A stretch of DNA of 63,933 nt, the filler included, from Octopus bimaculoides (taxonomy: Eukaryota): assembly GCF_001194135.2 (NCBI RefSeq). It is 8 parts of 5 records of this genome, joined end to end, with 100 filler letters (N's around TTAATTAATTAA, not from the genome) between each part and the next. Parts side by side here need not be neighbours in the genome. Positions count along the whole stretch, not along the records: positions 43,149 to 47,136 come from NC_068982.1; 7 more parts are not named here. The stretch is one strand, 5' to 3'. The position numbers and the translations under genes are program-made. Below the pieces are notes generated by a model. It did not search any database and was not told where the DNA came from. It worked only from the letters and a program-made list of their open reading frames with translations. The stretch's first letter is position 1. Every line of letters starts with the position of its first letter. Positions 43,149 through 47,236 of the stretch are shown piece after piece.

Positions 43149-43191
<43 letters not shown>

Positions 43192-44333
43192 TATGCGTGT
43201 ATATATATTTGTTTGTGCACACTCACATACATATGTATATAAGCTTTTTTTTACATTTATTTAATGATTATATGTTGTCATATTGTTATATTTTATATTC
43301 CTTATTCATTATCTTTCGGAGTTGATCAGACTCATTTTACCATCTGTCCTGTATCAGTCCCTTAACGTAACAGTTAAGAACAATATTTTATTCATTAGAT
43401 ACAATGTTGCGCTAAAAAAAATATTACAGTTTGTTCCCTGGATATTATTTAAATACTAGTTTGCACGGCAATTATGCATTTTATGAAACACATTAAATGT
43501 CTGTGTCGTTTTTTTTAATAACTATATGCAATAATATTAGCACCGAGCTGCATATTATATGCAAAGTAAGCACTTTGTTGTAACTGTATATAGATTAGTG
43601 TATACAAAGTTTCAATACAAAATAAAAATTTGACTTTGATTAAGATAAACTGAAATATAGAGTGAAATCTACGTACATTGATGGTCTGCTTGTATTCTCT
43701 TATACGCAGCCACTTATTCATATAAATATCTACCAGACTTCTTGCTGATGTCTGATAAATATTTATGTGCATATTTGATCTTCACGTCAGTCATATTTTG
43801 ACTTACTAATTTCAATGTTGTTTATTCTTTACTTAATTATTTTACTGGTTTAGATATTTTGGTCACCACCTTCATATATCTTTGTTAAATATATCCTCCT
43901 AAAATATATTTTCTCGATGTCAGTCGATTAGATTTTAAAAAGAATTAATTACTTCACTTTATAGAGAAAATTACATTTCAGCAGTGAAATACACGAGCTA
44001 TTTATGGTGGAATATACTGGTATAAGCAAAAGTAAATATAGCAAAACAGGCATAGAAATTTTTATTTGCACAGTGGCCTGAAGACATGAACACGGATTTC
44101 TACAATACAGACACTCATGTTCACACGAATTTCAAAATGCATGCAAACAGCCATAACAGGCAAACATACTCATCGAATCCATAGGGGACAAACGCTTGTA
44201 GAATCAAACACAAGCAAGCCTACACGAAAACATATTGCACATATTGCGGATGCAAAACATGCACAGAAATGCACGCGTAGACTTCCTGTGTGCATGATTT
44301 TTACGCATGCGCTGATCGTGCATGTGCAAACAT

Positions 44334-44334
<1 letters not shown>

Positions 44335-44373
<39 letters not shown>

Positions 44374-44762
44374 TCACAAAAGTGTGCCTTCGGCTAATGG
44401 CCTATGGCCATGTCTTCTTCTTCTTCTTCTTCTTCTTCGTCTTCTTCTTCTTCTTCTTCTTCTTCTCCTTCTTGTTCTTCTTGTTCTTCTTTTTCTTTTC
44501 TTCTTCTTCTTCTTCGTCTTCTTCTTCTTCTCCTTCTTCTTCTTCTGCTCCTTCTCCTTCTTCTTCTTCTTCTTCTTCTTCTTCTTCTTCTTCTTCTCAT
44601 TATTATTATTATTATTATTATTACTACTACTACAACTATTATTACCTCTTCTGGTACTTGCTGTAGTAGTTGTTGTTGTTGCTGTTGTTCTACATCTTCT
44701 TCTTCTTCTTCTTCTTCTTCTTCTTCTTCTTCTTCTTCTTCTTCTTCTTCTTCTTCTTCTTC

Positions 44763-44814
<52 letters not shown>

Positions 44815-44835
44815 CCTTCCTCTTCTTCTCCTTCC
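44335..44835 (+). repeat. (TG)n and long (CTT)n/(ATT)n/(GTT)n compound microsatellite
   Basis: Visible directly. Confidence 0.95.
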
Positions 44836-45170
44836 TCTTCACTATCTCTGGATAGTTTCTTTGTATGGTCGTTGTTATCATCATTACTATTTTATCGATT
44901 CAGTGATTTTCAATAGTATTTTGTACTAGTGTTACTATCAGTTGTTGTAGGTCACTTTTCGCTGGAATTTTTTCGCCATCGAAACGTTGTATGATGTGGC
45001 ATTTAGTACCATCTGATTTACGTGAGAAGCGGGTGCACTTTGTAAAAATTCCAGGTAATGACGGCAATACGAGAATGTGCACTTAGAAATTACATATATA
45101 TTGCTATGCGTTCATGCAACATATTTAATATTTGGTTGTGCACACAGGCATTATGTGTGTGTGGGGGGGG

Positions 45171-45210
<40 letters not shown>

Positions 45211-45352
45211 ATAATTTGTGTTGCGAGACCCTATCATACCTGATGTGAAACCGTGTGTTGAAACAGATATTGTTATATTCTGGGATTCTTCATTTTTACC
45301 TTTTTGGTGGCCAGGGTAAAGATGCAAATAAAGACATGCGCTATATATTCGT

Positions 45353-45541
45353 TCTTCACTCGTTTATTGCTGTTCTTATTTCATCTTATATCCATAGTCC
45401 GTAAATCTTTCGTCACACATCTGTGACATCTTCAGCGACCCATTCCGTCCTCCTGGTTCGCTTAATCTATTCTCTATGTGACGAAACATTTGAGAACAAT
45501 GGACATAAGACAGAATAACAACAGTAATAAACGAGTAAAGA
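45353..45541. repeat. Inverted repeat (45353-45416 / 45478-45541) with a hammerhead-like core on the minus strand (45408-45435); possible inverted PLE pseudo-LTR
   Basis: Minus strand CUGAAGA U GUCAC-agaugu-GUGAC GAAA. The arms share gtgacgaaa.attt..g.ac.atgga.ataaga..aataa.aacag.aataaacgagt.aaga. Confidence 0.6.
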
Positions 45542-46414
45542 GCCAATAATTACGAGAAAATCTTAATGATACGCCTTAAATGCACATCTATATTTTTTAG
45601 AAATTGATTAAATAGACCGAAATACTTTAAATGATGTTAATCAAGATCTAATTGCACAAACAATAACATTTGTTAAGTATAGTTGTTTAGAAGGTATTGC
45701 AATAGTTACTTCAAACACATAATGAAGTTTTTGATGAAAGGAATTGTCTCAGGAAAGAAGAGACATCATTATTTAATTGTTGCTATTTCCATCAACATTT
45801 CATCAAATATTTAAGATAAATATCAACAGTGGTAGATTTAATGCTTTACGAACTATCTCTTAGAAGTTGAAATAGTTTAACGATCGAAAACACGCAAACA
45901 GAATATGATTAGGAATAGCTGATAGGAGACTAAATGTGTATGTACATCCATATTGCCAATCAACATTACTATCGCTTTGTACTCTGCTACATTTATTAAG
46001 AAATCGATGCTTCAGTATTTCGTATGTGTATGATTTAATTTAAAATAAATCAGTGGAATATATATAAGTACATATAATACGAGGCAAACAGACACGAATT
46101 ACAGCGATACAAATTATATGATTTAATACAAGCTGCTGAAGGGGAACAATCACAACTCCGTGTTTCACTAGTTTTATATATCGTACGTCTAAGTTATATA
46201 AAACAAATGAACTCATCAGGCAATTTGGTGTATATTCACAGACTACATCACAAAATAATACAGATAGTACGCGATAATGTGTAGAGTAATCAAAGATTTC
46301 CCTTACACAGACAATACTCCTGGACGAGATAGAATTATACCCCTTAGACAGGTTTCAGTTGAGTCAAAAATAATCAATGTATGGACGATTCGTTTCCACA
46401 TTCTGAAAATAGTA

Positions 46415-47112
46415 ATCTCGTGTTTCCACTAAGAAATTCCTCTAATGACGGCATAGACTAAACACCACTTTTTTGCAGTTTAAAAATGTATCTAGGTCAA
46501 GAAAGTGTTTTGCTCTCTCGGTCAAGCAAAATTTACATCGTTTGCTCCCGTTGAGGAAGAGTTCCTGTCGTTCAAGCTGCTTCTATATAATTATGTATGA
46601 TGCACAATCTTCTTTTAAGCACCAGACGTAGCTGGTCAAGTGTGTATCTCTAGTATTCTAAAAGAGGACCTGCCAATATTAAGACGTTGCTTGAATGGAC
46701 CCTCTGAGGTTCCAACATATTTCCCTGCCTGAGCCCAAGTGCTGGTGTTGTTTCAATTGTTGTTGCTGTCGTTCTCGCTGCGAATGTTGTTGTTAGTGCC
46801 ATGCGAGTTGCTGCTTTATGTGTTGTTGTTGTTATTATTACTGTTATCGTTGCCATTGTTCCACTTGTTGCTGGACGCGATGTTGCTGCTGCTGCAACCG
46901 GCTGATGTTTTGTTGGTATTCACAACGCTGCCGCCTCTGACGTTAGTGCCAGACATCACCTCAGCTTCATAGACCAGGGTTTAGGAATTGTATCAAGCCC
47001 CACTGGGCATTTATTGCTGACACTACATGAGGATCCTTTCTCTGCTCGAGGTTTAAGTGCATTCACTAATAATTATTTAACGTTACGTTGGGTGCAGAGA
47101 TGAAACTGAGAC
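46415..47112 (-). mobile_element. Penelope-like element relic (copy 3): complete GIY-YIG domain with a 79-codon N/S-rich insert
   Basis: LLVNALKPRAEKGSSCSVSNKCPVG...TLVYEAEV-[79 codons]-YVGTSEGPFKQRLNIGRSSFR...TSYVWCLKEDCASYIII*KQLE...FLNGSKRCKFCLTERAK...FLNCKKVVFSLCRH. Confidence 0.9.
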
Positions 47113-47236
47113 TTATATATATATATATATATATATNNNNNNNNNNNNNNNNNNNNNNNNNNNNNNNNNNNNNNNNNNNNTTAATTAATTAANNNNNNNN
47201 NNNNNNNNNNNNNNNNNNNNNNNNNNNNNNNNNNNN

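What the first reader, a model, noticed from the sequence alone, without database searches (positions are those of the whole stretch)
46415..47112. Penelope-like family whose GIY-YIG endonuclease is split by a long Asn/Ser-rich, microsatellite-like insertion
Seen in sequence: on the minus strand the first endonuclease motif (LVYEAEV) and the second (KYVGTSEGPFKQR) are in the same frame but 237 nt apart (46720-46956, 79 codons): MSGTNVRGGSVVNTNKTSAGCSSSNIASSNKWNNGNDNSNNNNNNT*SSNSHGTNNNIRSENDSNNN*NNTSTWAQAGK. The rest of the domain follows (SYVWCLKE...CKFCLTER...CRH). Two further diverged copies on other scaffolds (18609-19512, 52745-55018) have an N/S-rich tract starting at the same position. 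Copies 1 and 3 share its borders (M[ST]GT...N[TN]TST[KW]AQx[QG]KYVG), while the interior varies in length and sequence. Established: in GIY-YIG nucleases, including those of PLEs, the two motifs are about 10 residues apart and form a beta-hairpin of the catalytic core. Inference: the active element encoded a hypervariable disordered loop inside its nuclease, because the repeats are phased mostly as AAC/AGC/AAT codons in the GIY-YIG frame. The loop might affect target choice or RNP assembly, and the element would carry trinucleotide-repeat seeds around a genome already rich in them. I do not know of a description of this architecture, but I cannot search the literature.
Basis: partly seen in the sequence, partly recalled or inferred. 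Interest (0 to 1): 0.88.

Follow-up and report, generated by a model that had tools for sequence, protein, structure and literature searches.

The report
Dead retrotransposon nuclease with expanded repeat loop
This is a broken, truncated copy of a Hydra-clade Penelope-like retrotransposon in which the naturally variable loop at the tip of the nuclease's catalytic hairpin has grown into about 70 extra Asn/Ser codons of decayed AAC/AGC repeat; the oddity is real but modest, and similar long loops occur in unbroken relatives.

Summary
On the minus strand, LVYEAEV (46957-46977) and KYVGTSEGPFKQR (from 46722) are in one frame, 237 nt apart. The tract between them is 51% Asn+Ser.

The element is a 5'-truncated, dead C-terminal endonuclease remnant of a Hydra-clade Penelope-like element (Craig et al. 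2021). It lacks the CCHH pair, has an SxCX5C remnant of the CxCX5C linker, has CxxC and CxH motifs, and abuts (TA)n. It carries at least two frameshifts and three in-frame stops, and the catalytic His is lost.

In 271 database relatives the two tyrosines are 9-19 residues apart in 267 (mode 14). Here they are 83 apart.

The tract is a decayed AAC/AGC array in a single phase.

The hairpin tip is a length hotspot in this clade. Loops of 22 and 29 aa occur in intact ORFs, and loops of 75-76 aa occur in two open reading frames from other lineages. A long loop in an active element is therefore plausible.

I could not reach other copies of this family. Whether its source element carried the tract remains open (my estimate about 0.55). 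No evidence supports a function.

The parts
47114..47136 (.). (TA)n microsatellite at the piece edge, directly 5' of the remnant. It is the likely insertion target.
   Evidence: TRF reports period 2 with 11.5 copies. Hydra-clade PLEs insert into (TA)n (PMC8557442 section 11). Relatives in L001 also abut (TA)n.
46980..47039 (-). Degenerate zinc-finger-like linker, KGSSCSVSNKCPVGLDTIPK. It is an SxCX5C remnant of CxCX5C followed by CP. The first and fourth Cys are lost, and it is one frame off the GIY block.
   Evidence: Translation. It aligns without gaps to the CNCRxKxxCPLxGxCL of relatives.
46957..46977 (-). GIY block LVYEAEV (beta-strand 1 of the hairpin).
   Evidence: It aligns to VVYEATL / LIYRAHV of relatives. 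In the AF2 model of P0011 this is strand 46-54.
46720..46956 (-). The 79-codon Asn/Ser-rich tract. It is a decayed, phase-coherent AAC/AGC trinucleotide array (core about 46747-46944) between native-looking loop ends (MSGT... and ...TSTWAQAGK). It contains an in-frame TAA and an in-frame TGA.
   Evidence: AAC x20, AGC x10, and 51/79 codons within one substitution of AAC or AGC in phase 0 only. The core matches perfect (AAC)n at 59%, against 42 +/- 0.4% in shuffles. TRF does not call it at score >= 30.
46639..46722 (-). YIG block KYVGTSEGPFKQRLNIGRSSFRILEIHT (beta-strand 2 and the helix with the catalytic Arg). The catalytic His is replaced by Gly.
   Evidence: The family consensus is YIGLTExTFKxRxxxHxxSF.
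46445..46657 (-). Rest of the nuclease in a third frame: HLTSYVWCLKEDCASYIII, then TAG, then KQLERQELFLNGSKRCKFCLTERAKHFLDLDTFLNCKKVVFSLCRH. It holds the CxxC, the conserved E and N, and the CxH. The stop codon is at 46442-46444.
   Evidence: About 10 nt are missing relative to relatives between SF and YVW. TAG 46583-46585 stands where relatives have an invariant Trp.
46154..46219 (-). Hammerhead-ribozyme-like core in the presumed 3' UTR: CTGATGAG, a hairpin with 22-nt arms, then GAAAC-ACGGA-GTT. It is probably a decayed PLE hammerhead, but this is not proven.
   Evidence: The pattern is found once against 0.01 expected. The hairpin is I2. Rfam finds no hammerhead here even at E <= 10. Relative L039 has a canonical type-I hammerhead about 200 nt 3' of its nuclease.

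Best explanation
The locus is a dead, 5'-truncated copy of a Hydra-clade Penelope-like retrotransposon lying next to a (TA)n tract. Only the C-terminal GIY-YIG endonuclease and the 3' tail are present.

The two catalytic tyrosines are 83 residues apart, against the clade's usual 12-17. The extra roughly 69 codons are a slippage-type trinucleotide (AAC/AGC) expansion. It grew out of the natively Asn/Thr/Ser-rich coding sequence at the tip of the beta1-beta2 hairpin.

In this clade that tip does not carry the two cysteines of the CCHH knuckle found in other PLE nucleases. It is a solvent-exposed length hotspot and can accept low-complexity sequence without disturbing the fold.

I judge it somewhat more likely than not (about 0.55) that much of the tract was already present in the source element when this copy was made. 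After that it drifted by slippage and substitution. I regard the tract as a tolerated, neutral or nearly neutral by-product, not as a functional module.

Shown: the identity of the element, the position of the tract, its repeat nature, the decay of the copy, and the variability of the loop in relatives. Inferred: slippage as the mechanism, the timing, and neutrality.
For: Identity of the element:
- A query made only of window residues scores 77.9 bits to P0011.
- The family profile finds 3621 proteins among 90%-identity clusters and 13868 among 50%-identity representatives.
- Full-length relatives carry RWK, DKT and YRDDG RT motifs plus this nuclease. This matches the Hydra-clade definition in PMC8557442.
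- There is no Cys pair between GIY and YIG, and CxxC and CxH are present.
- (TA)n lies on the 5' side.

Fold:
- The AF2 model of P0011 has pLDDT 86.6, with strands 46-54 and 61-67 and a loop at 55-60.
- Its best BFVD matches are nearly all GIY-YIG nucleases, with probabilities 0.99-1.0.

Loop statistics:
- Among 271 relatives the spacing is 9-19 residues in 267. The others are 22 (P0267, a 762-aa full-length ORF), 29 (P0249), 75 (P0185) and 76 (P0242, a 420-codon open frame).
- Close relatives of P0249 have loops of 27 and 13.
- The 36 metagenomic GIY..YIG pairs my regex paired correctly and in frame are 36-48 nt apart.
- Native and enlarged loops are built of AAC/AAT/AGY/ACA/CAA codons.
- In the AF2 model of P0249 the 29-aa loop is a lower-confidence coil and the core stays above 90 pLDDT.

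The tract:
- It is a single-phase AAC/AGC array.
- Its net length is a multiple of 3, while both flank indels are not.
- The same piece holds a 428-bp (GAA)n array, so the genome is prone to trinucleotide slippage.
Against:
- The tract has two in-frame stops, so it gives no evidence of an open frame.
- About 98% of sampled relatives have short loops, and 83 residues is longer than any seen in an open frame.
- The listed relatives are the best-scoring ones, so the sample is biased toward normal loops.
- TRF does not call the tract a tandem repeat. It is 26-36% diverged from pure AAC/AGC, so an origin by slippage is inferred from composition and periodicity, not observed.
- P0185's long loop is not repeat-like. 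Long loops therefore need not arise by slippage.
Confidence: 0.55

Rival explanations
1. Purely post-insertion microsatellite growth. The active element had a normal or only mildly enlarged loop (about 12-25 aa) containing a short AAC/ACA run. After this copy died, the run expanded by slippage and then decayed. Other copies expanded independently at the same seed.
For: - The tract is a single-phase AAC/AGC array with two in-frame stops.
- The copy is old and broken.
- The same piece holds a 428-bp trinucleotide array and several dinucleotide arrays.
- 267 of 271 relatives have loops of 9-19 residues.
- The shared 'borders' resemble native loop ends, so they do not prove inheritance of the interior.
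Against: - This is unverified, but independent expansion to long tracts in every copy is less parsimonious than inheritance.
- Relatives prove that 75-76-aa loops can sit in open frames.
- The tract is 26-36% diverged from a pure repeat. It is therefore not a young microsatellite, and it may never have been a pure one.
Confidence: 0.3
2. The active element encodes a hypervariable disordered loop inside its nuclease that has a function, such as target choice or RNP assembly, and it spreads trinucleotide-repeat seeds through the genome.
For: - Long low-complexity loops at this exact position occur in open frames in two other lineages: P0242 with 76 aa and P0185 with 75 aa.
- A full-length 813-aa ORF (P0277) carries a low-complexity insert of about 125 aa just upstream of the nuclease linker.
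- P0131 has an N/S/D/G tract of about 95 aa at that upstream site.
- The fold tolerates loop growth in models.
Against: - There is no evidence of function. Loop sequences are unrelated between lineages, lengths vary freely, and about 98% of the clade does without a long loop.
- Codon phase is explained by slippage alone.
- This copy is dead.
- P0242 and P0185 are singletons at 90% identity, and both copies are defective upstream of the nuclease (P0242's 5'-truncated, P0185's frameshifted), so neither is proven to come from a thriving lineage.
Confidence: 0.12
3. The tract is foreign sequence, either another repeat or a captured fragment, inserted into a dead copy. Alternatively, the two motif blocks are juxtaposed by chance.
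For: None specific. The first 20 or so codons (MSGTNVRGGSVVNTNKTSAGC) look less repeat-like than the core.
Against: - Both flanks align collinearly to one protein family at 78 bits.
- Three-base periodicity runs through the whole tract in one phase.
- There are no terminal repeats or duplications at its edges.
- The edges grade into native-type loop residues.
Confidence: 0.03

Closest known systems
Hydra clade of Penelope-like elements (Craig, Yushenova, Rodriguez & Arkhipova 2021, PMC8557442)
   Same: C-terminal GIY-YIG nuclease without the CCHH pair. CxCX5C-type linker, with CxxC and CxH around the conserved E and N. Insertion at (TA)n and frequent 5' truncation. Relatives have RWK and DKT RT motifs and a hammerhead ribozyme 3' of the ORF.
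   Different: The hairpin loop is 83 residues against the usual 12-17. The main text of that paper does not mention loop-length variation. The RT part is missing from this copy, and the hammerhead is at best decayed.
Canonical PLE endonucleases (Penelope/Poseidon, Neptune, Nematis, Naiad; cd10442)
   Same: A GIY-YIG nuclease attached to a PLE reverse transcriptase, with the same catalytic Y, Y, R, H, E and N layout.
   Different: These place two Cys of a CCHH knuckle directly between GIY and YIG, which should fix the hairpin tip. The window element and its clade lack them. This may be why the tip is free to vary (inference).
Homing-type GIY-YIG nucleases (I-TevI; the PBCV-1 and iridovirus HE_Tlr8p_PBC-V_like group)
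   Same: Same fold. The AF2 model of a relative matches viral GIY-YIG nucleases. hhalign lines up GIY, YIG, R and H with I-TevI (weak, E 0.009).
   Different: Their hairpin is short, about 10 residues. They have no RT partner and no Cys-rich linker. Pfam PF01541 does not detect this clade.
Terminon-associated GIY-YIG nucleases
   Same: PLE-related nucleases reported to contain 'large unique insertions' (PMC8557442).
   Different: [quoted passage not shown] The position and nature of their insertions are not given in the text I could read.
Coding trinucleotide-repeat or low-complexity expansions in surface loops (general phenomenon; my own knowledge)
   Same: In-frame growth by slippage from a short codon run, with Asn/Ser/Gln-rich composition and length polymorphism between relatives.
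   Different: Here it lies inside the catalytic hairpin of a transposon nuclease, in a copy that is no longer coding.

Membership tests
Hydra-clade Penelope-like element | GIY-YIG nuclease lacking the CCHH pair between GIY and YIG | tested here: met
   There is no CxxC between LVYEAEV and KYVG. The single Cys in the tract is part of the repeat. Relatives also have none.
Hydra-clade Penelope-like element | CxCX5C linker upstream of GIY | tested here: met
   The window has S-S-C-SVSNK-C-P, aligned without gaps to C-N-C-RxKxx-C-P. The first Cys is replaced by Ser (TCC) and the later CL Cys by Thr. The motif is degenerate but in register.
Hydra-clade Penelope-like element | CxxC and CxH motifs flanking the conserved E and N | tested here: met
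   CKFCLTE, LN and CRH are present at 46445-46582.
Hydra-clade Penelope-like element | RT with an RWK motif and with DKT in place of DKG, upstream of the nuclease in one ORF | not testable with these tools
   The RT is absent from the piece: the copy is truncated at (TA)n, which is also the piece edge. In relatives of the same nuclease family the motifs are present: P0154 LRWK/ADKT, P0238 MRWK/ADKT, P0267 ADKT, and YRDDG.
Hydra-clade Penelope-like element | Canonical hammerhead ribozyme in the 3' region | tested here: inconclusive
   CTGATGAG...GAAAC-ACGGA-GTT at 46154-46219 occurs once against 0.01 expected. Rfam gives no hit at E <= 10. Relative L039 has RF00163 at 25.3 bits, below the gathering score of 34.
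Hydra-clade Penelope-like element | Insertion into (TA)n | tested here: met
   (TA)11.5 lies at 47114-47136, directly 5' of the remnant. Only a 9-nt TA run (46058-46066) is seen on the 3' side, so the 3' junction is uncertain.
GIY-YIG nuclease superfamily | Beta-hairpin with the GIY and YIG tyrosines, followed by catalytic R, H, E and N | tested here: met
   Y (VY), Y (YVG), R (FKQR), E (LTER) and N (FLN) are present. His is mutated to Gly in this dead copy. In relatives all of them are nearly invariant.
GIY-YIG nuclease superfamily | GIY-YIG fold or profile match | tested here: inconclusive
   Pfam gives no PF01541 hit for the window or for relatives. A PDB sequence search finds nothing. Foldseek against the PDB gives nothing significant. 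Foldseek against BFVD returns top hits that are nearly all GIY-YIG nucleases, with probability 0.99-1.0 and E from 1.5e-3. hhalign against I-TevI gives E 0.009. PMC8557442 reports HHpred matches to cd10446 and cd10443.
Canonical PLE endonuclease (cd10442: Penelope/Poseidon, Neptune, Nematis, Naiad) | CCHH motif with two Cys between GIY and YIG | tested here: not met
   It is absent in the window and in all 271 relatives aligned.
Trinucleotide microsatellite | Head-to-tail copies detectable as a tandem array | tested here: inconclusive
   TRF at score >= 30 does not report it. However, 30/79 codons are exactly AAC or AGC and 51/79 are within one substitution, all in one phase. The core matches (AAC)n at 59%, against 42% in shuffles.

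The most novel reading that the evidence does not exclude
Hydra-clade Penelope-like elements repeatedly evolve very long (about 75-85 aa), lineage-specific, low-complexity loops at the tip of the catalytic GIY-YIG hairpin, and similar tracts just upstream of the nuclease linker, while remaining able to transpose. The window family would be one such lineage. Its active elements would encode an Asn/Ser loop, would seed AAC/AGC repeats wherever they insert, and the loop might modulate nuclease behaviour.
Probability: 0.3. Interest if true: 0.6.

Novelty: new variant of a known kind. Interest (0 to 1): 0.38.

Why it matters
If the long loop was carried by transposing elements, the GIY-YIG catalytic hairpin of this PLE clade tolerates insertions about six times its normal length. 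That would be a natural experiment on the plasticity of a minimal nuclease fold.

It would also suggest a consequence of losing the CCHH knuckle, which would otherwise pin the hairpin tip. And it would give a concrete route by which a retrotransposon spreads trinucleotide-repeat seeds through a repeat-rich genome.

If the tract grew only after insertion, this is ordinary microsatellite growth in a dead transposon copy. In that case it matters mainly as a caution: codon phase in a trinucleotide repeat is not evidence of selection.

Tried and rejected
- **Pfam** on the frame-corrected nuclease, with and without the tract, gave no GIY-YIG hit. It also gave no hit on full-length relatives.
- **Word-indexed protein search** with a query made only of window residues returned one candidate and no hits. 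Close copies of this family are therefore not in that collection.
- **Exact look-up** of ten window ORFs found none in the collection. The source genome and its other copies stayed out of reach.
I used a profile of real hits plus exact window fragments instead.
- **Seed sequences from memory.** Two family sequences I recalled from memory were used only as seeds. All conclusions rest on the real database proteins they retrieved, and on the window-only phmmer score against those proteins.
- **Related-loci scans.**
  - Profile A3 against metagenomes gave 80 loci, none with a long loop.
  - L078's extra length is a C-terminal duplication, not a loop.
  - Viral contigs gave nothing.
  - Prokaryote genome records gave 8 loci.
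- **Structure searches.** A PDB sequence search and Foldseek against the PDB gave nothing significant.
- **Upstream homology.** Homology upstream of 47039 is not demonstrable: observed score 36, shuffled mean 36.9.
- **Rfam** found no hammerhead in the window.
- **Literature.** No description of loop expansion in PLE nucleases turned up. The supplements of PMC8557442 are not held.
- **Rejected argument.** I rejected the idea that codon phase or the lack of frame-breaking indels in the tract proves coding constraint. At the flank indel rate, about 1.2 indels would be expected in 237 nt, so P(0) is about 0.3.

Full report
**1. What is in the sequence**

The piece (43149-47136) is AT-rich, non-coding-looking eukaryotic DNA full of simple repeats. 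It has (AT)n at both ends, (GT)n, (TG)n, and a 428-bp (TCT/GAA)n array.

On the minus strand between 47039 and 46442 lies a broken reading frame, spread over three frames:
- Frame b: KGSSCSVSNKCPVGLDTIPK (46980-47039).
- Frame c: HLTSYVWCLKEDCASYIII, a TAG, then KQLERQELFLNGSKRCKFCLTERAKHFLDLDTFLNCKKVVFSLCRH (46445-46642). The stop follows at 46442-46444.

- It has two frameshifts in the flanks, one of them with a deficit of about 10 nt.
- It has three in-frame stops, two of them inside the tract.
- The catalytic His is replaced by Gly.
- Two linker cysteines are lost.

**2. What the element is**

Pfam does not recognise the domain. A word-indexed search with the window's own residues found nothing.

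A small profile seeded with two sequences I recalled from memory retrieved 3621 real database proteins. An exhaustive HMMER search with a profile of those hits plus exact window fragments found 13868 representatives at E <= 1e-3.

The seeds do not matter for the conclusion. The window-only conceptual protein scores 77.9 bits against P0011.

The family consensus is CNCRxKxxCPLxGxCLxxxxIYxAxV-(loop)-KxYIGLTExTFKxRxxxHxxSF...NSTELSKYIW...W...SKRCxLCLTEK...LLNKRSELxSKCRHENK.

Full-length members (about 700-810 aa) have RWK, DKT, FDIxxFYPSI and YRDDG motifs upstream of this nuclease. Copies sit beside (TA)n in tandem and inverted arrays. One relative has a type-I hammerhead about 200 nt 3' of its ORF.

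This matches, feature by feature, the Hydra clade of Penelope-like elements as defined by Craig et al. 2021. That definition includes no CCHH, a CxCX5C linker, CxxC and CxH near E and N, RWK and DKT motifs, hammerheads, and (TA)n targets.

An AF2 model of P0011 (pLDDT 86.6) shows a hairpin with strand 46-54, loop 55-60 and strand 61-67. Its best matches among predicted viral structures are nearly all GIY-YIG nucleases, including iridovirus and PBCV-1 proteins. Searches against the PDB were uninformative.

The window copy is thus a 5'-truncated Hydra-clade remnant abutting (TA)n (47114-47136). I could not confirm that the host is an octopus.

**3. How unusual the spacing is**

I aligned all 274 fetched proteins to the family HMM (271 could be scored) and counted residues between the GIY tyrosine and the YIG tyrosine:
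- 9-19 residues in 267 of 271 (mode 14).
- 22 in P0267, a 762-aa full-length ORF.
- 29 in P0249.
- 75 in P0185.
- 76 in P0242.

The 36 correctly paired, in-frame GIY..YIG pairs in metagenomic DNA are 36-48 nt apart; three frame-shifted pairs measure 52-62 nt and the other six pairings (240-711 nt) are false. The window has 83, about 69 codons in excess.

The native loop is itself Thr/Asn/Ser/Asp-rich (TTNNATKN, TSTTSNKTTTKN) and is encoded by ACN/AAY/AGY codons.

It is an indel hotspot. Relatives of P0249 at 55-64% identity have loops of 27 and 13 residues with unrelated sequence.

The two long loops sit in open frames:
- P0242 is a 420-codon open frame in a 5'-truncated copy. Its loop is made of ACA/ACC/CAA/AAC codons.
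- P0185's loop is acidic and not repeat-like, and the copy has a frameshift upstream.

A second variable site, between HNKKIL and the Cys linker, carries tracts of about 95-130 aa in P0131, P0162 and the full-length 813-aa P0277.

In an AF2 model of P0249 the enlarged loop is a lower-confidence coil, while the core stays above 90 pLDDT.

**4. Nature of the tract**

The key figures come:
- AAC occurs 20 times and AGC 10 times among the 79 codons.
- 51 of 79 codons lie within one substitution of AAC or AGC, and only in the nuclease's phase.
- The 198-nt core matches perfect (AAC)n at 59%, against 42 +/- 0.4% for shuffles.

It is a decayed trinucleotide array, too degenerate for TRF to call.

A repeat that grows by slippage from an in-frame AAC/AGC seed keeps that phase without selection. 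AAT, AGT, GGC, GAC and ACC are each one substitution away from AAC or AGC.

The net length is a multiple of 3, whereas both flank indels are not. That fits slippage.

The tract's ends (MSGT... and ...STWAQAGK-YVG) resemble native loop ends (...STGKSYIG). Copies would therefore share these 'borders' whether their interiors were inherited or grew independently.

**5. Most likely history**

The hairpin tip in this clade is free of the CCHH cysteines that canonical PLE nucleases place there. It is also surface-exposed in the models. I infer that this is why it accumulates low-complexity sequence.

The window tract is the extreme of that tendency. Whether the source element already had it cannot be decided here, because no other copy of this family was reachable.

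For inheritance:
- Loops of 75-76 aa exist in open frames elsewhere.
- The tract is heavily diverged, so it is not a young pure microsatellite.

For post-insertion growth:
- The tract has in-frame stops.
- The genome context is repeat-prone.
- Long loops are rare in the clade.

I put inheritance of a substantial tract at about 0.55, purely post-insertion growth at about 0.3, a functional loop at about 0.12, and foreign insertion at about 0.03.

**6. Comparison and novelty**

The element belongs to a described clade. A GIY-YIG hairpin stretched to 75-85 residues is not mentioned in the papers I could search, and the supplements of the key paper are not held.

I rate it a new variant of a known kind, of modest interest. 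Loops tolerate insertions, this copy is dead, and no function is indicated. The recurrence of long loops in open frames across lineages is still worth a systematic look.

Noticed in passing
window 46154-46219 (-): A hammerhead-ribozyme-like core lies about 225 nt 3' of the nuclease stop: CTGATGAG, a hairpin with 22-nt arms, then GAAAC-ACGGA-GTT. A possible helix I is AAUUGC/GUGAUU. The pattern occurs once against 0.01 expected, but Rfam finds no hammerhead there. It is probably a decayed PLE hammerhead.
   Followed up: partly
window 45346-45548: An inverted repeat with 72-nt arms, 81% complementary and 59 nt apart. It looks like a hairpin or MITE and is unrelated to the PLE remnant.
   Followed up: no
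window 44413-44840; also 44336-44370, 45154-45210, 43149-43194: A 428-bp (TCT/GAA)n array with embedded (CAA/CAG)n and (AAT)n patches, plus (GT)n, (TG)n and (AT)n arrays. The locus is very prone to simple-repeat growth.
   Followed up: partly
P0242 (L092 551-1813), P0185 (L093 415-1104): Two relatives from marine metagenomes have open reading frames with 76-aa (T/N/Q/P-rich) and 75-aa (D/G/A-rich) loops between GIY and YIG. Both are singletons at 90% identity.
   Followed up: partly
P0131, P0162, P0277: There is a second low-complexity hotspot between the HNKKIL helix and the CxC linker. It holds an N/S/D/G tract of about 95 aa in P0131 and an S/Q/P/A tract of about 125-130 aa in P0162 and in the full-length 813-aa ORF P0277.
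   Followed up: partly
L084-L091: Copies of this animal retrotransposon nuclease occur in records labelled as bacterial MAGs. These include an Endozoicomonas MAG and the 'Cli_8' and CBDDTI bins. Host DNA was most likely binned by mistake.
   Followed up: no
L001 4300-9550: Four truncated copies of two Hydra-clade subfamilies lie in tandem and inverted order around (TA)n tracts. This is the complex insertion pattern typical of PLEs.
   Followed up: partly
L016 2424-2542 and 3100-3218: Two tRNA-model hits (44.8 and 50.4 bits), each spanning 119 nt, lie downstream of a PLE nuclease relative. They may be tRNA-derived SINEs or intron-containing tRNA genes.
   Followed up: no
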